From positions 1-64,000 of the IMG/VR virus record IMGVR_UViG_3300042514_000542: 64,000 nt of DNA; one strand, 5' to 3'. The notes beneath the pieces were generated by a model that did not search any database, had not been told where the DNA came from, and saw nothing but the letters and a program-made list of their open reading frames with translations. Positions 48,133-64,000 of the stretch are shown here, piece by piece. The first letter of the stretch is position 1; every line of letters starts with the position of its first letter. A program made the position numbers and the translations under genes.

Positions 48133-48354
48133 ACTATCTAATTGTTTTCTACTTTGTTTTTCCGTGTCTCACTTAGAAGAGCATCGCAAGTTTCAACGGA
48201 CTAACTTGCGATGCTCAAATTCTCATTCTGTTTTAATTAGACCCTTGCGATTTGATCCACTCGGCAATATCTGCCGCCAAGTCAATATCTTCGGTGCTAA
48301 CAACAATAGACATATTTTGTTTTTCCATGCGTCCTTAGTCTAAGTCTGTTTTAA

Positions 48355-48552
48355 TTAGACTTGAAAGATGCGTTTTTTAGTAAGATCTTGAAAAGTATTA
48401 CCACGCTTGGCAACCCTTTCTTCTAACCTTTCCAGGAATTCATTGCGCAAGCTAATGATCGCGCCCCTTGTAGCTTGTGGGTAGGGACGGGCGGCACGCT
48501 TGGCAAGCTTGTTAGCGCGCTCAATGACGGTATCGTGTGTGTATGTATTCAT
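48355..48552 (-). CDS. Small basic hypothetical protein (cassette)
   Basis: Starts 6 nt after a variant -10; its TAA lies in the next repeat. Confidence 0.65.
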   Translation of the reverse strand: MNTYTHDTVIERANKLAKRAARPYPQATRGAIISLRNEFLERLEERVAKRGNTFQDLTKKRIFQV

Positions 48553-48830
48553 GACTCCCCCAGTCTCATTCTGTTTTAATTACAGCCCCCCCCCTCTCAT
48601 GGAAAACATGAGACATAATGACACACACGCGCACCCATGCGTAAATTCTCATTCTGTTTTAATTATACATTCATCCCCTTCATAAGATTTCCTTATGATC
48701 TTTTCCTTATAGTCCTAAGACTTAGTAGTATCGGTATCACTACTATCTTCCGGTGAGGCTACCCACGCTTATGCCTTGATAACATATTGTTATTCTACTT
48801 CGGTTTTAATTACACCCATTCCCTCTATTA

Positions 48831-49055
48831 CTATTGGGAAATCTTTGCTTGAAGAGCTTCAATCTCTTGATGAAGAGCAATCTTCTTAAGTTCTACGATG
48901 ATTGTCTTAAGAACATCGAAAGGATAAACCAGTATGGAATAGTTTCCATATACAAAGTTCACAATCCTGTTATTAAGGTTTGCTTGGTTTGATGCACGCT
49001 TGGCAGCATCTATAAGTGTTTCGGAATTGTTCTTAGTAATGTTGATCGGTTTCAT
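48831..49055 (-). CDS. Hypothetical protein (cassette)
   Basis: Repeat promoter directly upstream. Confidence 0.65.
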   Translation of the reverse strand: MKPINITKNNSETLIDAAKRASNQANLNNRIVNFVYGNYSILVYPFDVLKTIIVELKKIALHQEIEALQAKISQ

Positions 49056-49423
49056 GATACCCTAATTCTAGTTCGGTTTTAATTAATGAGATTTGGTATG
49101 TGTGACAATTTGACGCACTGTATATGTTTTATAACACTTAGATAAGTTTATCAAATCAAATTGTTTGTCATATCGACAAAGTTATACTGGTGATAATGAT
49201 ATAATTATATCAATGAGTAATGGGATTAATTAGTTGGAGTATGTATGACTTGCTCACCAGACTTCTCACAAAGAACTACGGTAACATCATAAGACTTCTT
49301 AGCCTTAAATGTTGTAGCAGCTTTTTGTTGAGCTTCATAAGAAGTGTTGGCATAGACTTCAATCGACTTACCTTTATAGAATGCTTTGTATCCGTTCATG
49401 TTACTATTCTAGTTCGGTTTTAA

Positions 49424-49879
49424 TTACATGTGGTTCCAATCAATGGATACCAACTTACCATTCTTCAATCCCATATTGAAATCATGGGTATCACATACAT
49501 CAAATTTATTATGTAAGAACTTAACAAACTTGACATACTTCTTATATATCTTAGTCTCCATCTTTTCTGAAGTCTCAAAAGGCCATAGATCTACCTTAAA
49601 CTTCTCACACTTCTCTTGAATCATGACATTAAATTCATGATTACCTTTGAAGTATTGTAGGTTAGCAAAATGTTTATCACATGGGACTTCCTTAATCTCA
49701 TTATAACTACGTTGAATCTTAATGACATACTCATATCCCTTACGAGAATATACAGTTGATTCACAACCTCTTCCAATCACATTAAATCCTTTTGATTCAA
49801 GATACTCATAAGCCTTCTCAATATCAGTCATTTGAAGAAGTTTATTAACCAAAAACATTGTAACGCTGTTCAGTTTCAT
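49424..49879 (-). CDS. Minimal protein-kinase-like protein
   Basis: IGRGCESTVY (Gly loop), VIKI, DTHDFNMG (catalytic loop), VSID. Confidence 0.65.
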   Translation of the reverse strand: MKLNSVTMFLVNKLLQMTDIEKAYEYLESKGFNVIGRGCESTVYSRKGYEYVIKIQRSYNEIKEVPCDKHFANLQYFKGNHEFNVMIQEKCEKFKVDLWPFETSEKMETKIYKKYVKFVKFLHNKFDVCDTHDFNMGLKNGKLVSIDWNHM

Positions 49880-50003
49880 GCTATAAGTCTAGTTCGGTTT
49901 TAATCACTAAAAAGTTCAGATTTTCTCTAGGGAAAAATCACTTATATCCCTTACAGTATATAGGATTTCTCAAAACATCATTTCTGTTAGATTTAATCGT
50001 TTT

Positions 50004-50261
50004 TCAATCAAATTCTTTCCTAATACCATCCTTTTCATAGTCTCCATAACCCTTCATATATTCTTCTATCTCTTTAGGAGTTAGATTAGTCTCTCTTTCT
50101 CCCATAGAATCATAATAATGAGGTTTTGGACTTCTACTATAATAGTAATCAGCTTCACCTCTTTCTTTAGGTGTTTGAGTATATCTTGACTTAGTTACAT
50201 TCTTATTACAGAAGTGAACACTCATTGACATGATACTCTCATTACATTTCGGGCAGTTCAT
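50004..50261 (-). CDS. Hypothetical protein (cassette)
   Basis: MNCPKC...RGEADYYYSR.PKPHYY...EY.KGY. Confidence 0.65.
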   Translation of the reverse strand: MNCPKCNESIMSMSVHFCNKNVTKSRYTQTPKERGEADYYYSRSPKPHYYDSMGERETNLTPKEIEEYMKGYGDYEKDGIRKEFD

Positions 50262-50443
50262 AACCCTATTCTAGTTCGGTTTTAATTAATCTATGTATGT
50301 AATAAAAGACATGAATAATATAAGACCAGCACATATACCAGTAGCACCTGCTGCATCATTTAAATTTACTTGTAATAGGATTCCCATTACCATAATAAGT
50401 AAGAGTGATATAATGAATGAATAAAGTGGTTTCATTGTATTGT

Positions 50444-50944
50444 TTAATCAATAGTAAGTTCCTTCTTAGCCTTCACAAGATCATCAATGATACTGATAGG
50501 GAATGTTTGACATCCCACTTTAATAGTATTCTCTGTTACAGTTGCATTATGAGCTTCATTAAGTTTTACTTCTACTTCCTTTGGTTTTTCAATGATTCTA
50601 CCATAGTCAAGATAAGTTCCAGATGTTCTATTCCACAACCTGATAGTATTAGACTCGATTATGATACTTTGAACTTTATGCTGTAGGATTTTATTATTAT
50701 TATTTCTCCAATATACAGAAGTTCCAATCATCTTATAAGCTTTTACAATCTTATCTTCGAATGTTTCTGTTTCCACAAGTTCAAAGTAATCCGGATCCCA
50801 TGAAGAAGATATTTCTTCAAACCTAATACATGTTGGATTTATACTTTCAACGGTTAGAACTTTATCTTTATGATCCCAATTATTTTTAAATTGATATTTT
50901 TTGATTCTACGAACTTTATCTCCTACTTTAAATTTAACTTTCAT
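50444..50944 (-). CDS. Hypothetical modular protein (FKVGD..FELV and VGCQTF modules)
   Basis: Shares modules with 51088-51963 and 59763-60194. Confidence 0.7.
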   Translation of the reverse strand: MKVKFKVGDKVRRIKKYQFKNNWDHKDKVLTVESINPTCIRFEEISSSWDPDYFELVETETFEDKIVKAYKMIGTSVYWRNNNNKILQHKVQSIIIESNTIRLWNRTSGTYLDYGRIIEKPKEVEVKLNEAHNATVTENTIKVGCQTFPISIIDDLVKAKKELTID

Positions 50945-51087
50945 ATTATTATTCTACTTCGGTTTTAATTAATCCTATATTCTCCTATCTTCCTATTACT
51001 ATAAAACTTTTACCAATTCATTACTTGTGTTATTATGACATACTTATACTGTGTCATTTTGTCCCATCATATAAGTTTATTGGGGTC

Positions 51088-51963
51088 TTATTGAACTAAT
51101 TCAAACGTATTATTAATGATGTAAGATGTTTTTTCATTGTAACCGGGAATATTAATAAATATCACTTCACCGTCTTTATGCATCACTTCATACTTCATAC
51201 CCTTCTTTCTAATGGGTGTGTCAACAAGATTAATAACCCAATCACCAACTTTTACATCATAAATAGTTCTATGAATTTTAGGTTTTTCGTCTTGTAATAG
51301 TTTATTAAGAATATCCAGTGTAAATTCCCCTGCACCAATTTTTACTGATTCAATTTTACGATCACCATTAGCATAGTTATTCTCATTAGCCTTTAGAAAC
51401 TTCCTAGCTGATTGTAGAATACTATTATCAATTTTGGCACAACCAAAGTCATAACCATAAGAAGTCTTCTTTGCTGAATAACCATTAATCTTCACATCTT
51501 CCCAAGGTTCTGGTTTATATTCCTCAATAGGGAGAATAACGGGATATAACATCCTATTAGTATTATCCCATCTTCCTACAAGACATATAACAATACCATA
51601 CTTGTCCAAGGTATCATTGAAATCTTTAATGAGTGTTTGAGTTGGGTTGTTAAGTTCATTGACATTTGTATAACATTGAACGCCAGCTACCAGACCCGAT
51701 TTTGAGGTGTTTTCTTTGTTAAAAGGTTTGATTCTTTTACCAATATAGGACTTTGCCAGTTTGATTTGTTCTTCAATGGTGAGAGTTTTATTCACCAATT
51801 CAAACCTATATGGATACCAGAAACTAGGAACACCTTCAAGATATACATAGCTATCACTAACAGTGCTAATGGTATGAATAGATCCCAGAGGTAATAGATA
51901 CTCTCCACCCCTATCCATATTAATAACCTTTACTTTATCTCCAACCTTAAATGTGTGTGTCAT
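51088..51963 (-). CDS. Hypothetical modular protein
   Basis: Two KVGD...FELV modules flank a GY.AK...FGC module. Confidence 0.7.
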   Translation of the reverse strand: MTHTFKVGDKVKVINMDRGGEYLLPLGSIHTISTVSDSYVYLEGVPSFWYPYRFELVNKTLTIEEQIKLAKSYIGKRIKPFNKENTSKSGLVAGVQCYTNVNELNNPTQTLIKDFNDTLDKYGIVICLVGRWDNTNRMLYPVILPIEEYKPEPWEDVKINGYSAKKTSYGYDFGCAKIDNSILQSARKFLKANENNYANGDRKIESVKIGAGEFTLDILNKLLQDEKPKIHRTIYDVKVGDWVINLVDTPIRKKGMKYEVMHKDGEVIFINIPGYNEKTSYIINNTFELVQ

Positions 51964-52026
51964 ATTGTTATTCTATTTCGTTTTAATTACGAGCCTTTTT
52001 ATGTCTTGCTCAGGACGTTTGTTATA

Positions 52027-53544
52027 TTAGTCTTCCTTGTTCCTACGGGTAGGGCAATCTGTGATATGAACCAATTGTTTCATGGCACGGGTTGTCGCAA
52101 CGTATTGTAAGTTTTGTTCTTGTTCCAATTGCCAAGGTTGAACTGCATACTTGCTAGGGCTAAACTGTGCATCCCCAAGCCAATATACTCTTTCCCATTC
52201 CAATCCCTTAGCCTTATGAATGCTTGAGAGAGTGACAATATCAGGACAGTTCTTATCATCCGCATCAGTGAACATCTCTGTGATAAGTTTTTCCAAAGAA
52301 CCCAAGTCATTTTGTCCCAAGGACTGACAACGTTCAATAAGAATAATCATGGTATCCATCTTATCTTCAAGCAATTGAAGCTTGGCATAGGATGCTTTCT
52401 CAAACTCTTTGTTAAAGAACTCCACAAGCTTTTGAGTGAAGTCTGTAAGATCAGTAACCCTTTTCCACTTACGAACAAGCTTCTTAAGATCATTACCAAT
52501 ATCCCTACCTTCAATGCGGCATCCAATACCTTGTCTAATAAGAGCAAAGGCCAATGCTACGTTAGGTGCATTATTCCTACAAATAATACCATCTTTACCG
52601 CTGAAATTCATTGTAGGAACTTCATCCAAGAACTTATCATAAGTAGTTGAGAGAATTTCACCATCAGGGGATTGATCCCAAGCTTCAATATCCTCGAAAT
52701 ACTTCTTAGCTTCTGTGATGATATTCTTACCGCAACGATAGCAGGTTGTAAGAGGAAGTTCCGTGCAATTGAACATATCCTTAATAAGATTCATGGAATC
52801 ATTCTCAGCACCAGTAAAGCCATAGATAGCTTGTCCTTCATCACCGATAGACATAAGACGACCGGAAGGCTTAAGAAGAACCTTAAGAAGAAGTTTGCGG
52901 CATACATTAGTATCCTGTGCTTCGTCAATGATTACCCAATCATATTGTGTTCCCTGAATCTTATAGATCAAAGGAAGATATTGCATATCATCAAAGTCAA
53001 TGACCTTGGCATCACGATTGGAGTCCTTAAGAACATCCTTGGCAATCTCAATAACTTGTCCAAGGTCTGCATCAAAGTTCATCTCAATATCATGATGTTG
53101 AATAATGTCCATCCATGCTTTAGTATCATCAATAGATGTTTGTCCTTCAACTCCAAAGGCATTCTGCTTTGCAAAGCCTACAAGCTTTGTAATGAAGTTA
53201 CGAGTAACTCCAAGTTCAGGAGTATTACAATACTTATCTGTAATCCAAAAGACCTTAGAACCATCAACCTTGTGCCATCCAAGAGCCTTATAAAGAAGTT
53301 CTTTACCAGCGGAATGAACTGTGGCAGCTTTGGCATTAGGTAATGCCATGTTGGAAAGCTTATTCTGAAGTTGCACACTTGCTTTCTTATTAAAAGCCAT
53401 TGCAAGAACATTACCCTTCATATATTGAATGGAATGAACCGCAGTAGTTGTCTTACCACTTCCTGCACGGGCTTTGATAATAAGATTACCATTACCATTA
53501 AGAACCCAATCGTAAATGTCTTGCTGTTGTTTGCTTGCTTGCAT
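52027..53544 (-). CDS. UvrD/Rep-like superfamily 1 helicase
   Basis: ARAGSGKT, IIDEAQD, IGDEGQAIYGFTGA, CYRC, SIHKAKGLEW, YVATTRA. Confidence 0.92.
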   Translation of the reverse strand: MQASKQQQDIYDWVLNGNGNLIIKARAGSGKTTTAVHSIQYMKGNVLAMAFNKKASVQLQNKLSNMALPNAKAATVHSAGKELLYKALGWHKVDGSKVFWITDKYCNTPELGVTRNFITKLVGFAKQNAFGVEGQTSIDDTKAWMDIIQHHDIEMNFDADLGQVIEIAKDVLKDSNRDAKVIDFDDMQYLPLIYKIQGTQYDWVIIDEAQDTNVCRKLLLKVLLKPSGRLMSIGDEGQAIYGFTGAENDSMNLIKDMFNCTELPLTTCYRCGKNIITEAKKYFEDIEAWDQSPDGEILSTTYDKFLDEVPTMNFSGKDGIICRNNAPNVALAFALIRQGIGCRIEGRDIGNDLKKLVRKWKRVTDLTDFTQKLVEFFNKEFEKASYAKLQLLEDKMDTMIILIERCQSLGQNDLGSLEKLITEMFTDADDKNCPDIVTLSSIHKAKGLEWERVYWLGDAQFSPSKYAVQPWQLEQEQNLQYVATTRAMKQLVHITDCPTRRNKED

Positions 53545-53713
53545 GATACTATTCTAGTTCGGTTTTAATTAGGCTCAACTTCTACTGTAACACCGTGCAT
53601 ATATACCCAAGTTTTCTTATGGTAATATGCTTGTGATCTACACCACGAAGTTCTACCACGAAAGTCCATATATGCCACTATACCATTAGGGTATGTAATC
53701 TTTAGAGAGTATT

Positions 53714-53911: not shown

Positions 53912-54129
53912 AACCCTATCGTAGTTCGGTTTTAATTATTCACAGTAATTTATATATCCATTTATAATAAAGCTCTGTACTTTACATTGACATCAACAAT
54001 GTCATCATCATCAAATTCACCAGATAGAACTTTTTCTTCGGCATCTTCTTGTGAATCTGCTTCGATTTCAAATTCTGTATATTTTTCTTGATATAGTGTT
54101 ACTGAGTATTTCATATTATTAATTAAAGA

Positions 54130-54395: not shown

Positions 54396-54422
54396 TGTAG
54401 TGTAATTGTAGTTCGGTTTTAA

Positions 54423-54710
54423 TTAGTTACTAGCCATCTTAACTAGAAGAGTGATTTCAGTATCCTCATCTTCTGAATCTTTCATATAGATAGTTGTTCC
54501 ATCAAAGTAAATCTCTTGTTCTTCTTCAATGAATGCCACACTATATTCATTGAAGTCTGAATCATCCCAAGAGCAATACAACCATTGATGATCTGAATCA
54601 CCAGTAAGTTCATCAACAGATGGATAACAAAGACCATCACGATCAATAATAACAGCCCAAGACTTCTCAATAAGATCAAAGGCTTCCTGTAATGTAATTA
54701 GTTTCTTCAT
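54423..54710 (-). CDS. Acidic hypothetical protein (cassette)
   Basis: TACAAT-N6-ATG; stop inside the next repeat. Confidence 0.7.
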   Translation of the reverse strand: MKKLITLQEAFDLIEKSWAVIIDRDGLCYPSVDELTGDSDHQWLYCSWDDSDFNEYSVAFIEEEQEIYFDGTTIYMKDSEDEDTEITLLVKMASN

Positions 54711-54899
54711 GTCGTAATTGTAGTTCGGTTTTAATTAATCAAAACAGCCTAATAATACATGCAAATATGATATTACCACATATGATGAATACCCAAGTTT
54801 CCCATTCATCGAGGGTGCATCCAATTATACCTAGAAATAAACCCCAAAAGAATCCAAATATAATTTGTAGTAGTAGTAGTAGTATAAGCATATTTTTAA

Positions 54900-55469
54900 T
54901 TAGTTACTTGCCAGTCGAAAACCCTTAAGGTATTGCCTAAGCTTTTCTTGATAAGATGATTCATTGAAATCACCATCCTTTGCACCATAGATTGTTTCTG
55001 GAACAATGAATGCAATGGCACTAAGAGAGTTATTAAGATCAGGCTCATAAAAGCCTGTATGATTAATACCAAATTCCCACAACTCTGTTTTACGTTGGAT
55101 CATATCATTAGAACCACCACCATCCAATAGAATGAATGTCTTATGATAAGCTGCAAACATTTTATATTGTTCGATATGCCCATAGGTAAGACTGTATTCG
55201 ACAGCAGCATGACCCGCCTGAATACCTTTTTGTATGCCTGAAAGGTTATACATAACAAAAAAATACATTCTAAGTCCGTTATGTTTAGGGCTTCCTACCA
55301 CTGGTTCGATTTCATGGGGATTAAACCCTACAAAATCACTATCATGTTCCTTGATCAGAACACCAAGACTACCATTTCCATAAGCCCCGACCTCTTTAAT
55401 AAGACCGCTTTTAAGAACTTTAAACTTAGAACCAATAGGATATTTTTTTACCACTTCTTCTCTTGTCAT
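54900..55469 (-). CDS. Peptidyl-tRNA hydrolase Pth2-like protein
   Basis: MYFFV..NLS..QKGIQAGHAA...ILLDGG...FYEPDLNNSLSAIA resembles the Pth2 fold motifs. Confidence 0.65.
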   Translation of the reverse strand: MTREEVVKKYPIGSKFKVLKSGLIKEVGAYGNGSLGVLIKEHDSDFVGFNPHEIEPVVGSPKHNGLRMYFFVMYNLSGIQKGIQAGHAAVEYSLTYGHIEQYKMFAAYHKTFILLDGGGSNDMIQRKTELWEFGINHTGFYEPDLNNSLSAIAFIVPETIYGAKDGDFNESSYQEKLRQYLKGFRLASN

Positions 55470-55501
55470 AATACTATTGTATTTCGGTTTTAATTAAGAA
55501 A

Positions 55502-55593
55502 TGGTAGGGACGGTCGGAATTGAACCGACAAAGGAGTTATCCACTCCATACCCGATTATGAGTCGGAACCATTACCATTCTGGCCACATCCCT
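55502..55593 (-). tRNA. tRNA(CAT) with a long variable arm and CCA
   Basis: AGGGATG/CGTCCCT+ACCA; TCCGA-CT-CAT-AA-TCGGG; variable arm GGAGT-GGATA-ACTCC. Confidence 0.8.
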
Positions 55594-55599
55594 TTTAAT

Positions 55600-55631
55600 A
55601 TACCTGCTCTAACCAATTGAGCTACAAGCAC
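55600..55631 (-). pseudogene. 5' tRNA fragment (acceptor 5' strand and D arm only)
   Basis: GTGCTTGTAGCTCAATTGGTTAGAGCAGGTA, then truncated. Confidence 0.65.
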
Positions 55632-55725
55632 TTATGTATTTATTTAAATATAACATCGCATATTGCGTATCCTATAACAGCACCTATGAATAATAGTATT
55701 AGAAGTATTAGAAGTTCCATAATGT

Positions 55726-55932
55726 TTATTCGTATTTCTTAAAGATAACTTTATCCCTTCCATATTTATAACATAGTCCAATAATTAATATAAAAATACC
55801 CATGAATGATAACATCACACACATCAAAAGATCCATGAGTGTGACATATGAATGGCATCGAAATAGAGTTAAACATCCATAGAATCCTGATAGAAACCAG
55901 AGGATGATTGAAATGATAATGATTGATTCCAT
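55726..55932 (-). CDS. Small membrane protein (cassette)
   Basis: Two hydrophobic segments; TATAAT-N6-ATG. Confidence 0.6.
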   Translation of the reverse strand: MESIIIISIILWFLSGFYGCLTLFRCHSYVTLMDLLMCVMLSFMGIFILIIGLCYKYGRDKVIFKKYE

Positions 55933-55964
55933 GTTATTATTATAGTTCGGTTTTAATTAATAAG

Positions 55965-56048
55965 TGCCGCCACCCGGACTCGAACCGGGATACCCATAAG
56001 GGCGACGGATTTTAAATCCGTAGTGTCTACCAATTCCACCATGGCGGC
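55965..56048 (-). tRNA. tRNA-Leu(TAA)
   Basis: ACGGA-TT-TAA-AA-TCCGT; long variable arm; A73. Confidence 0.92.
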
Positions 56049-56058
56049 ATTATACTAC

Positions 56059-56271
56059 TTAATCAACAATCTCATATTCGTAATTTTCAATCTTTTCAAA
56101 TGCTACTTCCCATCCATCAAGTTGTATGATTTGTGCCATTTCCATCATATCATACTTCTCCAAAGAGTCAAACTTATCCTCAAACTCTTGTGCGACTTTT
56201 TCCGCCAGTTCTTCCGATTCATTAGTCCTAAGAGTATAGAACCTAAGATCATTGTGCATCTTTGCTGTCAT
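56059..56271 (-). CDS. Hypothetical protein (cassette)
   Basis: Repeat promoter upstream. Confidence 0.65.
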   Translation of the reverse strand: MTAKMHNDLRFYTLRTNESEELAEKVAQEFEDKFDSLEKYDMMEMAQIIQLDGWEVAFEKIENYEYEIVD

Positions 56272-56462
56272 ACCTAAATTATAGTTCGGTTTTAATTACA
56301 GAATGCTTGCTGCCTTATCCCACATAACATCAACTAGTGGTTGAATTGTCTCATGTTTTCCGGGTGTTGATGTAATAGTAAGTTCTCCATCTTCTTCCCT
56401 TTGAATACGAAAGATATAAATCTCACCATCAACTTCAATAGTTGTAGTAATTTCCCTTTTCA

Positions 56463-56735: not shown

Positions 56736-56886
56736 AACCTAATTATAGTTCGGTTTTAATTAATGGGCTTTGCCTTTATCTTCTTTGCGTTTTTTATAAT
56801 TACATCTTTGTTCTGAATAATGAATGGGAGAATGATAGGAATAGCATCAACAAAAGCATTCCATAGAAAGATAAGAATTTTACTTT

Positions 56887-57785: not shown

Positions 57786-57816
57786 AACAGCTTTATTATA
57801 TTTCGGTTTTAATTAA

Positions 57817-58044: not shown

Positions 58045-58064
58045 ATCGTAATTGTATTTCGGTT

Positions 58065-58322
58065 TTAATCAATGTCAATTTTATGAACACTCATAACCAT
58101 ATCTTCTTTGAGGTCTGGTTTAGGTTTATAGTTAGCTATAAGTGATTCCAGAAATGTTACATCCTTGGTCATATAATGATCAGTGTATATCCTACTGAAA
58201 TCGCTCCACCAATATACACTTCTACTAAACTTCATATCGTTAATGTCTGCGTATTCTGGGAAAAATATCCCCTTTCTAATAGCAAACATTCCATTATTAA
58301 ATTTTACGATTTTTACTTTCAT
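58065..58322 (-). CDS. Hypothetical protein
   Basis: Stop lies inside a repeat. Confidence 0.6.
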   Translation of the reverse strand: MKVKIVKFNNGMFAIRKGIFFPEYADINDMKFSRSVYWWSDFSRIYTDHYMTKDVTFLESLIANYKPKPDLKEDMVMSVHKIDID

Positions 58323-58874: not shown

Positions 58875-59219
58875 AATATTCTTTCGGTTTTTATCAACGG
58901 GATAAGTTACTTGACAGCATGATAATACATACAATGATGGTTATCAATACTCCCATAAGAAGTGACCACATAGTTGATTCTGACATAATGTTAATAGATT
59001 AGTGATAGGGAAACCGCAGTAACAATAGCACCAACTAAGGCTCCAAGGAAGAATGTGATTATAATTTCTTTCATGTTGCTATTGTAGTTCGGTTTTAATT
59101 AAATGGATTAGGGTGATAGAATTATTCTTTGAAAGATCTAGATGGGAAGCCTAGATAAGTGTCGGGAACAATTCCCGTCTTTTATTCTCTATACTTTTGA
59201 GCGTTTACCCTAAATTATT

Positions 59220-59735
59220 TCAATCTACATCAGATGGTAGGTCAAGAAGATTGTCTAGCTTAATAGTAAAGCACAGAAGATCTTTCTCTGGTTCAAGAAG
59301 TTTTTTAGCATCACTATTGGTAAGATAGGTAGCAAACTCATCCTTGGTAACTTCCTTACCATCAGCATAGAATACTGTTTGAGTCTTATGGTTATTACCT
59401 TGACTTGGATATAGGCGAAGATACAGTTCATCTTTGTGTTCAATGACATAGGGGAACCAAGACTTCTTAGTAAGCTTATCCTCATACCATTGACCCCATG
59501 GTAGTTCTTGAACTTCACCACGTTCACCAGCAGCAATAGCATCCTTTACAGCAGAGAGGTTAGCATAATTAACTCCAGCTTGAACAACAGCAACAGAACG
59601 TTTTTCAAGTAGAACATTCTTATGTTCAGCTTTAGGTTTAGGATTAGACTTCCATGCAGCCTTAACAAAGTTACCCTTTGCATTAAGGATTTTATCACGG
59701 ACGGATGCAGCATCTAGTTTAGTATTCGTTTTCAT
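59220..59735 (-). CDS. Hypothetical protein (cassette)
   Basis: GVNYAN...LPWGQW...FPYVIEHK..YLRLY motif. Confidence 0.7.
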   Translation of the reverse strand: MKTNTKLDAASVRDKILNAKGNFVKAAWKSNPKPKAEHKNVLLEKRSVAVVQAGVNYANLSAVKDAIAAGERGEVQELPWGQWYEDKLTKKSWFPYVIEHKDELYLRLYPSQGNNHKTQTVFYADGKEVTKDEFATYLTNSDAKKLLEPEKDLLCFTIKLDNLLDLPSDVD

Positions 59736-59762
59736 TGTAGTAGTAGTATAGTTCGGTTTTAA

Positions 59763-60194
59763 TTAATGTTTATCCTTCTTAAACTCATCAACCTTATCCG
59801 AAATCTCTTGGAATTTTTCAAAGGTAATGGTTTGACAGCCCACAGCAATACCCACATTATTAATTTTAGCTGTATATCCAGCCACATCGTTGACTTCATA
59901 AACCTTTGGAGGATTAGGATTAGTGAAAAAATCAATAATCTTTGAAATATCTTCTGGATACTCGAAAGGATATTTACTTTCTTCTCGAACGCGAGATCCA
60001 ATGGTATAATCATGTTTGATATACAGAACCGGATAATCCATATCCATTTGATGTAGCCTAGGGTTTGGTTCCTTAAACCCCATAACAGTAATGGGACATT
60101 GGGTGAAGTTGTGTAACAGATGATAAACGGCAAGTTTATCTTCTTTGGTGTGTGTTTTGATTGACAGTTCTTTATATTCGTTTTTCATATTCAT
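59763..60194 (-). CDS. Hypothetical protein with VGCQTI module
   Basis: TATAAT-N6-ATG; stop inside the next repeat. Confidence 0.7.
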   Translation of the reverse strand: MNMKNEYKELSIKTHTKEDKLAVYHLLHNFTQCPITVMGFKEPNPRLHQMDMDYPVLYIKHDYTIGSRVREESKYPFEYPEDISKIIDFFTNPNPPKVYEVNDVAGYTAKINNVGIAVGCQTITFEKFQEISDKVDEFKKDKH

Positions 60195-60218
60195 GTTTAT
60201 ATTATATTTCGGTTTTAA

Positions 60219-60425
60219 TTAAGGGTTGTTTAAATTATCAATAAACTTCCAAGCATCTTTCTCGGAATTGAAACAGATATGGCTACCACCGGAATATATA
60301 AACTTGAACCAGAAAGGCCACCACTTATATCTTTCTTCGGGATAATAGAAATACACACCCGGAATCCATATAGTAGTCTTCTTGGTGACTCGATACCTAC
60401 GGTTATTGATTGTTTTCTCTTTCAT
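60219..60425 (-). CDS. Hypothetical protein (cassette)
   Basis: Flanked by repeats. Confidence 0.6.
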   Translation of the reverse strand: MKEKTINNRRYRVTKKTTIWIPGVYFYYPEERYKWWPFWFKFIYSGGSHICFNSEKDAWKFIDNLNNP

Positions 60426-60472
60426 ATCAGAACCTTATCTATTTTCATAACCAAATTATACTTCGGTTTTAA

Positions 60473-60646
60473 TTAATACTCCCAACCTTCATACTTCTTA
60501 TAGGTTGGTTGACATTCTGGATCAAGTTTAGCCTTACGTCTTTCTTCCCTCTTCTTGGACTTCTTTAGAAAGTCTCTATACCTTGATCGTTTATGTGAAC
60601 CATCCTTCTTGGGAAAGTCCATATACCTTTCGATTTGTTCATTCAT
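60473..60646 (-). CDS. Small highly basic protein
   Basis: K/R-rich; stop inside a repeat. Confidence 0.6.
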   Translation of the reverse strand: MNEQIERYMDFPKKDGSHKRSRYRDFLKKSKKREERRKAKLDPECQPTYKKYEGWEY

Positions 60647-60703
60647 AATGAGATAATTGTTCAATCTTATCAAAAAGTTAAGTCTGTTCCGATAAATAAT
60701 ATT

Positions 60704-61399
60704 ATGGCAAAGAAGATAAATTTAGATGTTGAGAAGTTGAAAAGTTTAAATGATGAGGGTATGACGATAACGGAAATAAAATTACATTTTGGAGTCTCGG
60801 ATGACTTAATTAGAAATTATTTCAAATTATATAATTTAATACCTAATCGAAAGAAGAGGAAATGGTCTGAAGACGAAAAGTTAAAAATTTCTAAAAGAAG
60901 AAAGATTTTCCTAAAGGAGAATCCCGATAAACATCCTTGGAGGTCTAAGGATAAGTTTAAATCAGTTCCATGTGAGAAGGTTAAAGATTTTTTGAATAAT
61001 TTAGGTGTGAAGTTTATTGAAGAATATGATCCAAATATACACAATAGAACATTTTCTATTGATATTGCCATGCCCGATAAGTTAATAGCATTAGAGATTA
61101 ATGGTAATCAACATTACGAGAGTGATGGTAGTTTGAAACCATACTATCAAGAACGTCACGATCTATTAGAATCCAACGGATGGACTGTATATGAAATACA
61201 TTATAGTGCTTGCTTCAATCTCGATAAGTGGAAAAATTTTGTCGATGAATTAAAGTCATCTAATAATAAGATTAATTTCAATTACTTCGAATATACACCT
61301 AACGAAATCAAAAAATGGATATGCTCTGATTGTGGTTGTGATGTTAGCCGTGGATCAATTAGATGTAAATCTTGTTATTATATTTCTCGAATAAAATAA
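60704..61399 (+). mobile_element. Free-standing DUF559/Vsr-like (PD-(D/E)xK) putative homing endonuclease
   Basis: SIDIAMPDKLIALEINGNQHY...RHDLL...GW.V; N-terminal HTH and C-terminal CxxC...CxxC; antisense to neighbours; GATAAATA late promoter. Confidence 0.78.
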
Positions 61400-61479: not shown

Positions 61480-61494
61480 ATTGAAAGTTATTTA

Positions 61495-61737: not shown

Positions 61738-61738
61738 A

Positions 61739-62062
61739 TTACCAAATCTTTCCAAGTGTTTCCATCACTTTTTCTTTAACTCTTTCGTCCCAGCCAGCAG
61801 TTCTATTAACACGACCATTCTTAATAACACCACGATTGGTCTTAGTATTAACAGCAGCAATCCTTATGGCATCAGCACCCACTTTTCTTGATACACCATT
61901 AGGAGTAACAGAAGAGAACACCTTGATTAGAATGTCTGTATTCTTTTTGACTACAAGAGTATATACATACTCACCACCTTCGATTACCTTGTTCCAACCC
62001 TTATCAGGTTTGAAGAGTGTATCGGTTTCAATTTCTGTAACGGTAACGTATGTTGCAGCCAT
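61739..62062 (-). CDS. Hypothetical protein (cassette)
   Basis: TATAAT-N6-ATG at 62062; SRKVGADAIR...RVNRTAGW motif. Confidence 0.7.
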   Translation of the reverse strand: MAATYVTVTEIETDTLFKPDKGWNKVIEGGEYVYTLVVKKNTDILIKVFSSVTPNGVSRKVGADAIRIAAVNTKTNRGVIKNGRVNRTAGWDERVKEKVMETLGKIW

Positions 62063-62082
62063 ACACAAATTATAGTTCGGTT

Positions 62083-62322
62083 TTAATTAATCTCTTCCCA
62101 CAAGTTTTCCAAAGCCTCAAGCATTTCACCTTCATTTCCCTTATAGTATTTCTCAAGATATGTAAAGAATCCCGTGAAACCATATTCCTTAAAAGTTTCC
62201 CTAAGATTATTCTTATCCCTCCAACGTGTTCCAGACTTTATTTCCTCTAATACACATTTGAAAGCAGCATCCTTAAAGTCTTCCATAGCTTTAACTTCTT
62301 CTGGAGATAATGTGATCTTCAT
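62083..62322 (-). CDS. Hypothetical protein (cassette)
   Basis: Flanked by repeats. Confidence 0.65.
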   Translation of the reverse strand: MKITLSPEEVKAMEDFKDAAFKCVLEEIKSGTRWRDKNNLRETFKEYGFTGFFTYLEKYYKGNEGEMLEALENLWEEIN

Positions 62323-62513
62323 AACAGTATTATAGTTCGGTTTAATTATCCCTGTTTCTAAGTTCTTCTAGAATTTCTTCTTGAAGCTGTATTTGACGTT
62401 GTTGTGGCGTAATAACAATATCACGGGACACGACATAATATACTCCATAATATACTCCAATTGCTAATGCAATAGCAAATACAACAGCTACTAAAATTTC
62501 AGATGATTTCATA

Positions 62514-62915
62514 TTAGTCTAAGCTCCAATCAATTTCCTCTTCCAATTCACCCACACACTCTTCCGCCCATTGAGACTCTCGAAAATTCCTATAAGACAT
62601 ACCAACCCATAAGGAAAGCATAGCCAATAGTGCCAGTTCCAAAGTCTTGTGTTTGGAATGTTCTACATAGTCTGTAGTGGGAGGTTCCAAATAAGAACCA
62701 CTATCATACGCCTCATGTCCAACTTCAAACTCCGTGAAGTCTTCATTCGCCATGATAGTAATGCCATCAAAGTTCATACCCCAATATCCATCCATGTCTT
62801 GATAGAACTCATTGGGGAATACACTAATCTTTTGCTTGAGATTACTCTCAACAAATTTTAGAAATACTTCCACTTCTTTATTAGCGAACTTAATCTGTCT
62901 TTCTAGGTTATCCAT
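62514..62915 (-). CDS. Acidic hypothetical protein (cassette)
   Basis: TATAAT-N6-ATG. Confidence 0.65.
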   Translation of the reverse strand: MDNLERQIKFANKEVEVFLKFVESNLKQKISVFPNEFYQDMDGYWGMNFDGITIMANEDFTEFEVGHEAYDSGSYLEPPTTDYVEHSKHKTLELALLAMLSLWVGMSYRNFRESQWAEECVGELEEEIDWSLD

Positions 62916-63189
62916 GATAGTATTATAGTTCGGTTTTAATTATTGACAAATAACCAAATTCCCACAATTATACATAAAGCAGCCAACAATGAAATTAGTG
63001 ATAAAATAATTACCAACCAACCACATGTGATTATAATATCTATAATCACCAAAACTGGCAGAAAGATGAGAAACAATCCTAGATATTTTTTAAATATATT
63101 TGACATATTTCTATTAACTAACTTTTATATATTGTGCTATCACTATCAGAATACCAATAATAATCGCAGCTATTACCATATCATTCATA

Positions 63190-63387
63190 TTAAAAATTTC
63201 CAAATTTTTCGTCAGAGGGAAAATCAGATTTGATTAGTTCCTGTATATCCTTCCTAAATTCATAATATTTGTCAAGAAGTTGACTCGCAACATTATCGGA
63301 AAAATATTCTGTATCGAATAATTCGTGAGCAACATTATCGAAGACACTTTCCAGTTCTTCGATAATGTTCTTTCTATTAGCGTTCAT
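63190..63387 (-). CDS. Hypothetical protein
   Basis: Overlaps the upstream ORF. Confidence 0.55.
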   Translation of the reverse strand: MNANRKNIIEELESVFDNVAHELFDTEYFSDNVASQLLDKYYEFRKDIQELIKSDFPSDEKFGNF

Positions 63388-63619
63388 ATTTAAGAATTAG
63401 AGGATTGGTTGGTAAAACATTAGAAAACTTTGCGGGACGTTTATAGTAACCACGAATTTGTTCACCTTTTTTATTATAGAAATGATTAAGCCTTCCATTA
63501 GTGGATGCTACAATCATTTTATGAGTCTTCTTAGCCGATTCAAGCTTCCTATCAAAGTCCTTAATGAATAAGCTATAGAAGAATTGTTTAAATGTTCGTT
63601 TGTCTTTCTCGTCTTTCAT
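63377..63619 (-). CDS. Basic hypothetical protein (cassette)
   Basis: TACAAT-N6-ATG. Confidence 0.6.
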   Translation of the reverse strand: MKDEKDKRTFKQFFYSLFIKDFDRKLESAKKTHKMIVASTNGRLNHFYNKKGEQIRGYYKRPAKFSNVLPTNPLILKYER

Positions 63620-63643
63620 ATTGCTATTGTAGTTCGGTTTTAA

Positions 63644-64000
63644 TTACGTAAATCCTACGGTTCCCATCAAACATTCTGGACGTTCAATGATCTTATATCC
63701 ATAATCGGACATATCATACTTAAACCAGACCTCATTACTATAATCCTCACCCCACTTAAGTCCATCAATACAATCTAAGTAATGGGTTTCGATCAGTAGG
63801 TATTCATAGTATCCTTCACAGATACCATACGGATCATTGGACTTCTTAACAGTCCCAATAAGTTCATCTTTGTCTAGGAATGATCCACGATACTTTCCAC
63901 CAGATTGCCAAGCATGATAAAGTTCTTTATCTTCTCTCCACTTATCCTTAGCAACACTATCACGATTTTTCTCGCATTCCCTATATACTTCCCAAGACTT
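63644..64000 (-). CDS. Hypothetical protein, 5' end outside the window
   Basis: Frame is open from the window edge to a TAA inside the repeat at 63644. Confidence 0.6.
   Translation of the reverse strand, partial: KSWEVYRECEKNRDSVAKDKWREDKELYHAWQSGGKYRGSFLDKDELIGTVKKSNDPYGICEGYYEYLLIETHYLDCIDGLKWGEDYSNEVWFKYDMSDYGYKIIERPECLMGTVGFT

What the first reader, a model, noticed from the sequence alone, without database searches (positions are those of the whole stretch)
48219..63646. Gene-cassette array delimited by one repeat acting as stop codon, promoter and leaderless start
Seen: about 29 minus-strand copies of TAATTAAAACCGAAN-TANAAT, plus about 8 plus-strand copies at 21.3-30.0 kb, spaced roughly 0.1-1.6 kb apart. 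In many cases the upstream gene's stop is in or touching the repeat (48355, 49424, 54423, 57817, 58065, 59763, 60219, 60473, 62083, 63644, 26051). The next ATG usually follows the -10 box after exactly 6 nt, with no Shine-Dalgarno sequence. Only a few copies have TTGAC(A/T) 16 nt upstream, so the spacer is more conserved than the -35. Established analogue: PeSL promoter cassettes mediate modular shuffling in some T4-type phages. Inference: a minimal cassette system in which recombination between repeats excises or shuffles self-contained genes, and/or the AATTAAAACCG box binds a phage activator or sigma factor.
Basis: partly seen in the sequence, partly recalled or inferred. Interest (0 to 1): 0.8.

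Follow-up and report, generated by a model that had tools for sequence, protein, structure and literature searches.

The report
Phage early promoter driving leaderless genes
The repeat is the standard early-gene promoter of an uncultured freshwater T4-like phage, placed so that transcripts start on the ATG itself with no ribosome-binding site; I found no evidence that it acts as a gene-shuffling cassette.

Summary
TAATTAAAACCGAANTANAAT occurs 35 times in the window (0.17 expected). There are 62 copies in the first 99 kb of the source contig, all pointing the same way as the genes. ATG lies exactly 6 nt after TANAAT in 40 of 62 copies. The base before it is a pyrimidine in 92%. No Shine-Dalgarno sequences are used. 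Copies without an ATG precede tRNAs.

The element is a sigma-70-type -10 hexamer (A-11 and T-7 invariant) joined to a conserved box at -27 to -14. The box stands in for a -35 element. Five copies also carry TTGACA 16 nt upstream. The element drives rIIA, RNA ligases, a helicase, tRNAs and many small unknown genes, so it is the pre-replicative promoter class, giving leaderless mRNAs. A second, T4-late-type class (TAAATA-N5-ATG) is leaderless too.

Relatives keep the motif at orthologous genes. A more distant lineage keeps the layout with a different box (AAACACTA), which points to a lineage-specific, probably phage-encoded, reader.

The cassette idea is not supported. Synteny breakpoints are not enriched at motif-bearing junctions. 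Lineage-specific ORFs mostly lack their own motif. There is no stem-loop, so these are not PeSLs. Local homogenisation of variants does hint at some recombination between copies. No RNA data were available, so start sites are inferred.

The parts
48219..63646 (-). Window part of the early-gene array: 27 motif copies (up to 3 mismatches) plus 2 copies with a 1-nt deletion. The array continues beyond the window to at least 98.9 kb of the contig.
21317..30011 (+). Eight plus-strand copies inside the tRNA cluster, pointing the same way as the tRNA genes and ORFs.
21317..21337 (+). Copy with -10 TATAAA (T-7 lost). No ATG. A hairpin and T-run follow directly. Probably inactive, or overlapping a terminator.
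21437..21457 (+). Copy with TTGACA 16 nt upstream. tRNA-Glu starts 12 nt after the -10 (21470).
23906..23926 (+). Degenerate copy (3 mismatches) with TTGACA upstream. A tRNA with anticodon CUA starts at 23941.
25794..25814 (+). Exact copy with TTGACA upstream. ATG at +6 opens the 76-aa ORF 25821-26051.
26045..26065 (+). Copy (TGATT...). The upstream ORF stops at TAA, motif nt 5-7. tRNA-Lys lies 95 nt downstream.
28688..28708 (+). Exact copy with TTGACT upstream. tRNA-Asp begins 5 nt after the -10 (28714), so the predicted start is at or next to the mature tRNA 5' end.
28876..28896 (+). Exact copy. ATG at +7 opens the 114-aa ORF 28904-29248.
29991..30011 (+). Exact copy. ATG at +6 opens the 179-aa ORF 30018-30557 (peptidase/endolysin-like). 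The upstream ORF stops in motif nt 1-3.
48219..48239 (-). Last copy of the array, variant AAAACAGAATGAGAAT. No adjacent ATG. The transcript would begin with a 14-bp hairpin and an A-rich leader ahead of the 122-aa ORF 47764-48132.
48337..48357 (-). Variant copy (3 mismatches). ATG at +8 opens a 31-aa ORF. The upstream ORF stops in motif nt 1-3.
48562..48582 (-). Variant copy. ATG at +9 opens the 65-aa ORF 48355-48552.
48645..48665 (-). Variant copy. ATG at +6 opens only a 13-codon ORF.
48792..48812 (-). Exact copy (TAGAAT). ATG at +6 opens only an 8-codon ORF.
49065..49085 (-). Exact copy (TAGAAT). ATG at +9 opens the 74-aa ORF 48831-49055. The ortholog in the relative also has a 9-nt spacing.
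49406..49426 (-). Exact copy (TAGAAT). ATG at +6 opens a 57-aa ORF. The upstream 151-aa ORF stops in motif nt 1-3.
49886..49906 (-). Copy (TGATT...TAGACT). ATG at +6 opens the 151-aa ORF 49424-49879.
50268..50288 (-). Exact copy (TAGAAT). ATG at +6 opens the 85-aa ORF. The upstream stop is in motif nt 1-3.
50951..50971 (-). Exact copy (TAGAAT). ATG at +6 opens the 166-aa ORF 50444-50944, a paralog of the 291-aa ORF upstream.
51970..51990 (-). Copy with a 1-nt deletion (GTAATTAAAACGAAATAGAAT). ATG at +6 opens the 291-aa ORF 51088-51963.
53551..53571 (-). Exact copy (TAGAAT). ATG at +6 opens the 505-aa UvrD-type helicase 52027-53544. The upstream stop is at motif nt 5-7.
53918..53938 (-). Copy (TACGAT). 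ATG at +6 opens the 65-aa ORF.
54405..54425 (-). Exact copy. ATG at +9 opens the 61-aa ORF. The upstream 95-aa ORF stops in motif nt 1-3.
54717..54737 (-). Exact copy. ATG at +6 opens the 95-aa ORF 54423-54710.
55476..55496 (-). Exact copy, 5-8 nt after the 3' end of tRNA-Met. ATG at +6 opens the 189-aa hydrolase-like ORF 54900-55469.
55939..55959 (-). Exact copy, 4 nt after the 3' end of tRNA-Leu. ATG at +6 opens the 68-aa ORF.
56278..56298 (-). Exact copy. ATG at +6 opens the 70-aa ORF. The upstream stop is in motif nt 1-3.
56742..56762 (-). Exact copy. ATG at +6 opens the 90-aa ORF. The upstream stop is at motif nt 5-7.
57795..57815 (-). Exact copy. ATG at +9 opens the 108-aa ORF. The upstream ORF ends in a TGA touching the motif.
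58051..58071 (-). Copy (TGATT...) with TTGACA 16 nt upstream. ATG at +6 opens the 75-aa ORF. The upstream stop is at motif nt 5-7.
59081..59101 (-). Exact copy. ATG at +6 opens a 27-aa ORF.
59745..59765 (-). Copy (TATACT). ATG at +9 opens the 171-aa ORF 59220-59735 (90% identical ortholog in the relative, which also has the motif). The upstream stop is in motif nt 1-3.
60201..60221 (-). Exact copy. ATG at +6 opens the 143-aa ORF. The upstream stop is in motif nt 1-3.
60455..60475 (-). Exact copy. ATG at +6 opens only 8 codons. The 68-aa ORF 60219-60425 starts 30 nt after the -10 box (23 nt after the predicted +1). The upstream stop is in motif nt 1-3.
62069..62089 (-). Exact copy. ATG at +6 opens the 107-aa ORF (orthologs in 4 related contigs). 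The upstream stop is at motif nt 5-7.
62329..62349 (-). Copy with a 1-nt deletion in the A-run. ATG at +6 opens the 79-aa ORF 62083-62322.
62922..62942 (-). Exact copy. ATG at +6 opens the 133-aa ORF. The upstream stop is at motif nt 5-7.
63626..63646 (-). Exact copy. ATG at +6 opens the 80-aa ORF. The upstream ORF stops in motif nt 1-3.
47719..47755 (-). A 15-bp hairpin followed by a T-run, downstream of the last ORF of the array. Likely terminator of the whole early transcription block.

Best explanation
The 21-bp repeat is the core promoter of the pre-replicative (early/middle) genes of an uncultured freshwater T4-like phage.

Its 3' half, TAnAAT, is a sigma-70-family -10 hexamer. Its 5' half, TAATTAAAACCGAA at -27 to -14, takes the place of a -35 element. 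It is most likely the binding site of a lineage-specific, probably phage-encoded, specificity factor (an activator or a sigma-like protein). That last step is inferred, not shown.

Transcription starts on the 7th base after the hexamer, which is the A of the ATG. The first gene of each unit is therefore made from a leaderless mRNA with no Shine-Dalgarno sequence. Later genes in a unit are translated by stop/start coupling. There are no terminators between units, and the preceding ORF simply runs into the TAA codons of the next promoter.

The promoters are inherited together with their genes. They are not, on present evidence, preferred sites of gene gain or loss.
For: Shown by sequence:
- 35 copies in the window against 0.17 expected. 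62 copies in 99 kb, strictly co-oriented with the genes and absent from the structural-gene blocks.
- ATG exactly 6 nt after the hexamer in 40 of 62 copies.
- Anchoring only on the 9-mer ATTAAAACC (120 sites in two genomes), the hexamer reads T .97, A .98, N, A .86, A .86, T .97, the sigma-70 signature. The base before the ATG is a pyrimidine in 91% and +1 is A, the usual preference of RNA polymerase at start sites.
- Five copies have TTGACA/T at a 16-nt spacing, about 0.04 expected by my own base-frequency estimate. This fixes the register as -35/-10.
- Copies without an ATG precede tRNA genes. One ends 5 nt before tRNA-Asp.
- SD cores occur upstream of 6% of ORFs against 9.8% at random positions. 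28 of 57 non-first ORFs overlap the upstream stop or lie within 5 nt of it.
- Driven genes include rIIA, two RNA ligases, a PARP-like ADP-ribosyltransferase, a DNA methylase, a UvrD helicase, a ribose-phosphate pyrophosphokinase, tRNAs and many ORFans. Other early-type genes lie in the same block (Thg1; NAMPT, which has a late-type promoter; an rIIB-like gene, which has a TTGACA-type promoter). This is a T4-type early set.
- A second class, TAAATA-N5-ATG, has 17 sites against 0-4 at other spacings, and 16 of them open ORFs of at least 50 aa, including the head protease. Using the T4 numbering (TATAAATA at -13 to -6, PMC2988020), it puts +1 on the A as well.
- Relatives at about 70-75% DNA identity keep the motif at orthologous genes while the flanks diverge: both 17, neither 15, discordant 7.
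- A more distant lineage (helicase 67% identical) has the same layout with another box, AAACACTA-N3-(T/C)AnnAT-N6-ATG: 32 copies in 17.5 kb, 22 with ATG at +6.
- No bacterial genome among 185,579 species representatives holds more than one copy.

Established knowledge: a -10 motif 6-7 bp before the start codon, with no -35 and no SD, marks leaderless genes (PMC12340547).
Against: No transcription start site has been mapped. No RNA run holding this phage was listed.

No sigma, MotA, AsiA or other DNA-binding factor was found among about 80 proteins scanned. More than half of the genome was out of reach.

The host is unknown, so a host polymerase that reads the box by itself cannot be excluded.

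A few copies open only 8-27-codon ORFs (48792, 48645, 60455, 59081), so not every +6 ATG need be a real start.

Seven copies have a 9-nt spacing, which implies a 3-nt leader or a shifted start.
Confidence: 0.78

Rival explanations
1. PeSL-like mobile cassettes. Recombination between the repeats excises, inserts or swaps promoter-plus-gene units, so the repeat is mainly a recombination site that creates the variability of this region.
For: - The region is a typical hyperplastic block: a collinear backbone interrupted by many lineage-specific small ORFs.
- Variant forms of the motif are clustered along the array (p = 0.0003).
- The terminal sub-array is homogenised differently in two relatives, TAGAAT in this phage and AAAACCAAAnTAAGAT at orthologous genes in the other. 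This looks like gene conversion or local duplication.
- Tandem paralogs each carry a copy of the motif, whereas the relative has one gene without it.
- PeSL-mediated shuffling is documented in other T4-like phages (PMC2839356, PMC4122927).
Against: - Motif-bearing junctions are not enriched for synteny breakpoints: odds ratios 0.35-3.1 in 8 comparisons, none significant.
- Unique-ORF runs have a motif on both sides in 12 of 63 cases, against 12.1 expected. 49 of 63 do not start with a motif, so they are not self-contained promoter-gene units.
- In the closest pair available, the switch from 97% to 74% identity lies about 340 nt from a motif.
- The mosaic contig in run X2 changes identity inside genes.
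- The contig 'joints' at repeats have sides of only 20-36 nt.
- There is no stem-loop, -35 box or SD.
- The shared sequence is only 21-22 bp.
Confidence: 0.12
2. A promoter read by the host alone. The unmodified host RNA polymerase holoenzyme recognises the whole 21 bp. The box acts through the sigma domain 3/spacer contacts or through A-tract DNA shape. No phage factor is needed, making this a true immediate-early class.
For: - The driven genes include classic immediate-early functions, and there are more than 60 such promoters but only a handful of canonical TTGACA-type ones.
- TTGACA can sit directly next to the box, so sigma region 4 binding is compatible with it.
- -10-only promoters are enough in some phyla (PMC12340547).
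Against: - The box is nearly invariant (about 24 bits by my own estimate from the per-position values), far more than host promoter elements usually are.
- It changes as a unit between phage lineages while the layout stays the same.
- No bacterial genome holds more than a chance single copy.
- No base-specific contacts of sigma-70 holoenzyme at -18 to -27 are known (my own knowledge).
Confidence: 0.25
3. The box is an operator, not an activating element. The promoters are -10-only, and the conserved box between -27 and -14 binds a phage repressor that shuts the whole early class off later in infection.
For: - The box lies in the spacer, a classic operator position.
- It is extremely conserved across all early promoters.
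- Late genes use a different promoter.
- TAATTA within the box is palindromic.
Against: - The lineage-2 box (AAACACTA) has no palindrome.
- Promoters that carry TTGACA still keep the box, and no box-free -10-only copies of this class were seen.
- No repressor-like HTH protein was found.
Confidence: 0.1
4. Promoter of a phage-encoded single-subunit (T7-like) or other non-canonical RNA polymerase, with the whole contiguous 21 bp as its recognition site.
For: One contiguous block of about 21 bp is conserved, AT-rich upstream and TATA-like at the 3' end. It superficially resembles T3/T7-class promoters (resemblance from memory, a lead only).
Against: - The variable and invariant positions of the hexamer match sigma-70 rules (A-11 and T-7 fixed, -10 position free). 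In lineage 2, T-12 can be C.
- TTGACA occurs at the correct sigma-70 spacing in 5 copies.
- Nothing is conserved from +1 to +6 apart from the ATG.
- No RNA polymerase domain appears in the 10 largest window ORFs I submitted to Pfam (466-1300 aa).
- T4-like phages use the host polymerase (PMC2988021).
Confidence: 0.05
5. An RNA-level signal. The motif is transcribed and acts as an endonuclease processing site or as an AU-rich translation enhancer. Leaderless or short-leader mRNAs would then come from cutting long transcripts.
For: - There are no terminators between units, so read-through RNAs that contain the motif must exist.
- The motif is AU-rich and lies just 5' of start codons in a genome without SD.
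Against: - The same element precedes tRNA genes.
- TTGACA at -35 spacing and the sigma-70 pattern of the hexamer have no meaning for RNA.
- Internal cistrons do without the motif.
Confidence: 0.05

Closest known systems
T4 middle promoters (MotA box plus sigma-70 -10; sigma appropriation by MotA/AsiA; PMC2988021)
   Same: A host-type -10 hexamer is combined with a phage-specific upstream box that replaces the -35 element. There are dozens of copies ahead of pre-replicative genes, including rIIA. All point in one direction in a T4-like genome.
   Different: The box sequence is unrelated (TAATTAAAACCG against (a/t)3TGCTTtA). It ends 3 bp from the -10, not 12±1 bp, so it lies in the spacer rather than over -35. 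TTGACA can coexist with it. No MotA or AsiA homolog was found in the parts scanned. The transcripts are leaderless, whereas T4 mRNAs carry SD leaders.
PeSL / PmSL promoter-stem-loop cassettes of T4-like phages (PMC2839356, PMC4122927)
   Same: A repeated promoter element sits in the intergenic spaces of a hyperplastic region full of small ORFans in a T4-like phage. Some signs of exchange between copies exist.
   Different: There is no stem-loop, no conserved -35, no AT-rich upstream part and no SD. The element is 21 bp rather than a longer composite element made of AT-rich region, stem-loop, -35/-10 promoter and SD. Synteny breakpoints are not enriched at it. Excision was not demonstrated.
Leaderless genes with a -10 motif next to the ORF (Deinococcus-Thermus, Actinobacteria: PMC12340547, PMC3160421) and leaderless transcripts of Thermus phages (phiYS40, from my own knowledge of Sevostyanova et al. 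2007; paper not held)
   Same: A TAnnnT-type -10 lies 6-7 bp before the start codon, with no -35 and no SD.
   Different: Here the -10 is fused to a long invariant box. The arrangement serves two promoter classes of a T4-like phage with 35% G+C from lake water. The host is unknown.
T4 late promoters (TATAAATA at -13 to -6, gp55/gp33/gp45; PMC2988020)
   Same: The second class seen here, (C/T)TAAATA with no -35, lies ahead of head genes.
   Different: Only the TAAATA core is conserved. It sits exactly 5 nt before the ATG, so late mRNAs would also be leaderless.

Membership tests
PeSL cassette | Sigma-70-like early promoter with both -35 and -10 boxes (N17) | tested here: not met
   The -10 is present. 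There is no information at -35 in the logo. TTGACA occurs in only 5 of 62 copies.
PeSL cassette | Stem-loop (terminator) just upstream of the promoter | tested here: not met
   5 terminator-like sites in 17 kb against 7.3 expected, none next to a motif. No conserved sequence upstream of -28.
PeSL cassette | Shine-Dalgarno sequence and start codon at the 3' end | tested here: not met
   The start codon is at a fixed 6 nt, but no SD is present: 6% of ORFs against 9.8% at random positions.
PeSL cassette | Indels or replacements between close relatives coincide with the element | tested here: not met
   Junction tests were null. One recent breakpoint lies 340 nt away. The test is limited by crude ORF calls and by the scarcity of relatives above 95% identity.
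PeSL cassette | Minicircle excision between tandem copies | not testable with these tools
   Only assembled contigs were available. Joints with 20-36 nt sides are uninformative.
T4 middle promoter / sigma appropriation | Sigma-70-dependent -10 element TAtaaT | tested here: met
   T .97, A .98, N, A .86, A .86, T .97 when anchored on the box alone.
T4 middle promoter / sigma appropriation | MotA box (a/t)(a/t)(a/t)TGCTTtA 12±1 bp upstream of the -10 | tested here: not met
   The box is TAATTAAAACCG and ends 3 bp from the -10 (definition from PMC2988021).
T4 middle promoter / sigma appropriation | MotA and AsiA encoded by the phage | tested here: inconclusive
   Not found among about 80 proteins scanned with PHROGs or Pfam. 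About 105 kb of the genome was not available.
Leaderless gene with adjacent -10 | -10 motif 6-7 bp upstream of the start codon | tested here: met
   40 of 62 copies at exactly 6 nt and 3 at 7 nt. The same holds in two further lineages.
Leaderless gene with adjacent -10 | No Shine-Dalgarno sequence and no 5' UTR | tested here: met
   Absence of SD is shown. Absence of a UTR is inferred from the geometry only.
Leaderless gene with adjacent -10 | Transcription start mapped at the start codon | not testable with these tools
   No RNA run was listed.
T4-type late promoter (second class) | TATAAATA at -13 to -6, no -35, ahead of late genes | tested here: inconclusive
   The TAAATA core with N5 before the ATG occurs at 17 sites, 16 ahead of ORFs including the head protease. 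Only 6 of the 8 positions are conserved. gp55 and gp33 were not located.
T7-like single-subunit RNAP promoter | Phage RNAP gene, and conservation running through +1 to +6 | tested here: not met
   No RNA polymerase domain in the 10 largest window ORFs I submitted to Pfam (466-1300 aa). No conservation after -7 apart from the Y-ATG. The rest of the genome was not seen.

The most novel reading that the evidence does not exclude
A previously undescribed way for T4-like phages to redirect host RNA polymerase. A phage-encoded factor (an activator or a minimal sigma) would read a 12-14-bp box in the spacer, directly next to the -10, and co-evolve with it between lineages (AAAACCG against AAACACTA). 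This would be coupled to obligatory leaderless expression of both early and late genes, which implies a host or a phage-modified ribosome that starts efficiently on 5'-terminal AUG.
Probability: 0.4. Interest if true: 0.65.

Novelty: new variant of a known kind. Interest (0 to 1): 0.5.

Why it matters
Class-specific phage promoters, and leaderless mRNAs, are each well known. What stands out here is the combination in a T4-like phage:
- an almost invariant box fused to the -10, in place of a -35;
- start sites set on the ATG in two separate promoter classes;
- no Shine-Dalgarno use at all;
- the same layout with a different box in a sister lineage.

This gives a clean handle for three tasks. 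First, finding a new promoter-specificity factor, by looking for the protein that co-varies with the box. Second, calling gene starts in these abundant lake phages, using motif +6 as the start. Third, asking how fully leaderless expression works during infection.

It also cautions against reading every repeated intergenic promoter in a hyperplastic region as a recombination cassette.

Tried and rejected
1. Near-identical DNA in GenBank phages: none. The capsid protein is at most 33% identical to any isolate. rIIA and helicase searches gave no host clue, nor did the protein atlas.
2. RNA-seq evidence for start sites: no RNA run was listed.
3. Reads laid from four lake metagenomes: the 'joints' all fall at motif copies but have only 20-36 nt on one side. 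I rejected them as cross-matching of the repeat. The depth peak at 56010-56210 coincides with the tRNA-Leu gene and probably reflects other organisms' DNA.
4. Cassette model: junction test, flank test, close-pair breakpoint and stem-loop scan were all negative.
5. Search for a sigma, MotA, AsiA or HTH factor among about 80 proteins: nothing found. The 1054-aa late protein gave only sub-threshold KOW and polyvalent-protein hints and no PDB relative.
6. Motif in bacterial genomes: 21 single hits. Six of them are one conserved Flavobacteriaceae coding region. None is homologous to the phage. I rejected this as evidence for a host.
7. Stop-codon recoding, suggested by the CUA tRNA: reading through TAG or TGA fuses no convincing gene pairs.
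8. Literature search for the motif string, or for leaderless T4-like phages: nothing relevant.
9. Rfam: only tRNAs.

Full report
**What is there.** The pattern TAATTAAAACCGAANTANAAT matches 35 times in the window with up to 3 mismatches. There are 27 matches on the minus strand between 48219 and 63646 and 8 on the plus strand between 21317 and 30011. Shuffled sequence gives a mean of 0.17. Two further minus-strand copies differ by a 1-nt deletion.

The window is positions 1-64000 of a 206,590-bp IMG/VR contig, IMGVR_UViG_3300042514_000542. DNA runs that hold it are lake-water metagenomes. By joining the tiles fetched from the same contig, I followed the array to at least 98.9 kb. That gives 62 copies in 99 kb: all minus-strand copies lie between 48 and 99 kb, and all plus-strand copies between 21 and 30 kb.

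The phage is T4-like. It has a Gp23-type capsid protein, a head protease, a head-closure protein, NrdA/B, rIIA, an rIIB-like protein and RNA ligases. It is far from any isolate: the capsid is at most 33% identical, and there is no nucleotide match in GenBank phages.

**Geometry.** In 40 of the 62 copies an ATG follows TANAAT after exactly 6 nt. In 7 copies the distance is 9 nt, and in 5 it is 5, 7 or 8 nt. Copies without an ATG mostly lie in front of tRNA genes. tRNA-Asp begins 5 nt after the hexamer, tRNA-Glu 12 nt and the CUA tRNA 14 nt.

The preceding ORF ends inside the motif in 34 of the 62 copies: TAA at nt 1-3 in 21, TAA at nt 5-7 in 8, and further 3' in 5. I read it as a consequence of maximal packing against an AT-rich element that holds stops in two or three frames. 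I do not see it as a separate function.

**Why it is a promoter with the start on the ATG.** I anchored the alignment only on the 9-mer ATTAAAACC, which gives 120 sites in this phage and its closest large relative. The downstream hexamer then reads T .97, A .98, N, A .86, A .86, T .97. The two bases that sigma-70-family factors need most (A-11, T-7) are fixed, and the third position is free.

The base just before the ATG is a pyrimidine in 91-92% of sites, and the next is A. That is the usual preference at start sites and is not forced by the ATG. Five copies carry TTGACA or TTGACT exactly 16 nt upstream of the hexamer. From base frequencies I estimate about 0.04 expected. Four of these five are in the tRNA cluster. 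This fixes the register as -35/-10.

With the hexamer at -12 to -7, the A of an ATG that follows after 6 nt is +1. The same geometry (a -10 motif 6-7 bp before the ORF, no -35, no SD) is the accepted signature of leaderless genes in Deinococcus-Thermus (PMC12340547).

Shine-Dalgarno cores occur before 6% of the ORFs in the array, against 9.8% at random positions. Of the 57 ORFs that are not first in a unit, 28 overlap the upstream stop or lie within 5 nt of it, and 10 of these use the ATGA overlap. Terminator-like hairpins are not enriched in the array: 5 found, 7.3 expected. The only strong one closes the block at 47719-47755.

**A second class tells the same story.** TAAATA followed by exactly 5 nt and ATG occurs 17 times in the 99 kb, against 0-4 times at every other spacing. 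Sixteen of the 17 open ORFs of at least 50 aa. These include the head protease at 4837 and the ORFs after it. In T4 the late box TATAAATA occupies -13 to -6 (PMC2988020). By that numbering TAAATA-N5 again puts +1 on the A. The exact string CTAAATAATAGTATG is present in at least 120 other IMG/VR contigs, so leaderless late genes may be common among aquatic relatives.

**Which class of genes.** The motif stands before rIIA, two RNA ligases, a PARP-like ADP-ribosyltransferase, a DNA methylase, a UvrD-type helicase, a ribose-phosphate pyrophosphokinase, tRNAs and dozens of small ORFs without known relatives. Other early-type genes lie in the same block: Thg1, NAMPT (which has a late-type promoter) and an rIIB-like gene (which has a TTGACA-type promoter). 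That is the pre-replicative gene set of a T4-type phage. The motif is absent from the structural-gene blocks.

**The box.** The logo shows no information upstream of -28 and none at -35. Positions -27 to -14 are almost invariant. In T4, middle promoters combine a host -10 with a phage box that replaces the -35 (PMC2988021). That is the closest functional analogue. However, the MotA box has another sequence and lies 12±1 bp from the -10, whereas this box ends 3 bp from it and can sit beside a TTGACA.

**Comparison with relatives.**
- The 211-kb contig IMGVR_UViG_3300017780_003104 and smaller contigs have about 70-75% DNA identity to this phage. They keep the motif at orthologous genes while the 10 nt before it and the 6 nt after it have diverged. 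In ortholog pairs the motif is present in both 17 times, in neither 15 times and in one only 7 times.
- A somewhat more distant contig keeps TAATTAAAACCG but lets -15 to -13 vary. It also has box-free TTGACAA-N15-TAAAAT-N6-ATG promoters.
- Contigs whose helicase is 67% identical have no copy of the motif. They do have 32 and 27 copies in 17.5 kb of AAACACTA-N3-(T/C)AnnAT-N6-ATG, with the same A-11/T-7 rule, the same pyrimidine at -1 and ATG at +6 in 22 and 15 copies.

So the layout is conserved over a wider clade, and the box changes as a unit between lineages. No genome among 185,579 bacterial and archaeal species representatives has more than one copy. The 21 single hits include six from one conserved Flavobacteriaceae coding region, and none is related to the phage.

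From this I infer, without proof, that the box is read by a lineage-specific factor that is probably phage-encoded. I did not find such a factor among about 80 proteins scanned.

**The cassette hypothesis.** PeSLs are defined as an AT-rich stretch, a stem-loop, a -35/-10 early promoter, an SD and a start codon. They are found next to indels between close relatives, and excision as minicircles has been shown experimentally (PMC4122927, PMC2839356). Here the stem-loop, -35 and SD are absent.

The region is hyperplastic: a collinear backbone with many lineage-specific small ORFs. But in eight pairwise comparisons, gene junctions that carry a motif were not more often synteny breakpoints than junctions without one. 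Odds ratios ran from 0.35 to 3.1, and none was significant.

Of 63 runs of lineage-specific ORFs, 12 had a motif at both ends (12.1 expected), 26 only at the downstream end, 2 only at the upstream end and 23 at neither. The variable ORFs therefore mostly hang on the 3' end of an existing unit and are not self-contained promoter-gene modules. These counts rest on simple ATG-ORF calls of at least 35 aa, and reciprocal comparisons are not independent.

The only pair of contigs close enough to show a recent exchange switches from 97% to 74% identity about 340 nt from the nearest motif. A mosaic contig in one lake run changes identity inside genes. The many 'joints' reported at motif copies in that run have 20-36 nt on the shorter side. 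That is what the repeat alone would produce, and the tool itself warns about this.

**What does speak for some exchange between copies.** The free position of the hexamer is clustered along the array (31 of 53 neighbours identical, 18.6 expected, p = 0.0003). This is mainly because the last 11 copies (48.2-53.6 kb) all have G at that position, giving TAGAAT in most of them. In the relative, the orthologous end of the array, including the helicase and a 74-aa ORF, instead uses AAAACCAAAnTAAGAT throughout. In lineage 2 the same end uses TAGAAT/CAGAAT.

Either neighbouring promoters are homogenised by gene conversion or duplication, or this sub-class co-evolves with its reader. A tandem pair of paralogs (51088-51963 and 50444-50944) each has a copy, whereas the relative has one gene without the motif. 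This fits local spread of promoters. It does not show cassette mobility.

**Verdict.** The best explanation is a class-specific promoter that yields leaderless mRNAs. Its lineage-specific box replaces the -35. The recombination-cassette part is not.

I rate this a new variant of known kinds (phage class promoters, leaderless genes), of moderate interest.

Noticed in passing
window starts 4837, 5514, 5969, 10474, 12333, 18761, 43820, 60704 (+) and 10432, 25719, 28652, 43787 (-): A second promoter-like class, (C/T)TAAATA-N5-ATG, resembles the T4 late box and also places +1 on the ATG. There are 17 sites in 99 kb against 0-4 at other spacings. The exact string CTAAATAATAGTATG occurs in at least 120 other IMG/VR contigs.
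   Followed up: partly
window 23941-24013 (+): A tRNA with anticodon CUA (amber-suppressor type, labelled Pyl by ARAGORN) has its own TTGACA-plus-motif promoter. Reading through TAG or TGA did not fuse convincing gene pairs, so I saw no sign of stop-codon recoding.
   Followed up: partly
window 21470-32161 (+) and 55502-56048 (-): There are 23 tRNA genes: 21 in one plus-strand cluster and 2 embedded in the minus-strand early array. Each of those two ends 4-8 nt before the next motif copy.
   Followed up: partly
window 43787/43820 and 10432/10474: Back-to-back divergent late-type promoters. Two TAAATA-N5-ATG units on opposite strands lie within about 35-45 bp of each other.
   Followed up: no
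window 60704-61399 (+), 25123-25719 (-); contig 73391-74314 (-): Homing-endonuclease-like genes sit inside early or tRNA regions, each with a late-type TAAATA promoter: a weak hit at 60704, antisense to the array; an HNH type at 25123-25719 on the strand opposite the tRNA cluster; and a LAGLIDADG plus HNH type outside the window, co-oriented with the array.
   Followed up: partly
window 47764-48665 (-): The end of the array differs from the rest. It has four closely spaced variant copies (AAAACAGAATGAGAAT) 83-225 nt apart, visibly G+C-richer small ORFs, a G9 run, and a 14-bp hairpin at the 5' end of the last transcript. Relatives show a similar cluster of closely spaced promoter copies without ORFs at the same end (L165 12382-12666; L166 15055-17138).
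   Followed up: partly
window 50444-50944 and 51088-51963 (-): Tandem paralogs (both match phrog_4317 at the N-terminus), each with its own motif copy. The relative has a single gene there without the motif.
   Followed up: partly
contig 89024-90259 (-) (L013:98-1333): An early gene under the motif encodes a PARP-like ADP-ribosyltransferase with WGR and PARP-regulatory domains. It recalls the T4 Alt/Mod enzymes that modify RNA polymerase, but this was not tested.
   Followed up: no
contig 71724 and 80685 (-): Canonical TTGACA-N16-TAnAnT promoters without the box stand before a 552-aa DUF7788 protein and the rIIB-like gene. Their leaders are 30 and 15 nt long, A/C-rich and free of SD. So leadered mRNAs exist too, and they also lack SD.
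   Followed up: no
window 56010-56210: In all four lake metagenome runs, contig depth jumps to about 60-190 over the region next to tRNA-Leu, against 1-10 elsewhere. This is probably cross-mapping of other organisms' tRNA genes.
   Followed up: no
window 40623-43787 (-): A 1054-aa late-promoter protein has no family assignment. It gave only sub-threshold KOW and DNA-binding-protein hits and weak atlas similarity to polyvalent-protein ADP-ribosyltransferase modules, and it has no PDB relative.
   Followed up: partly
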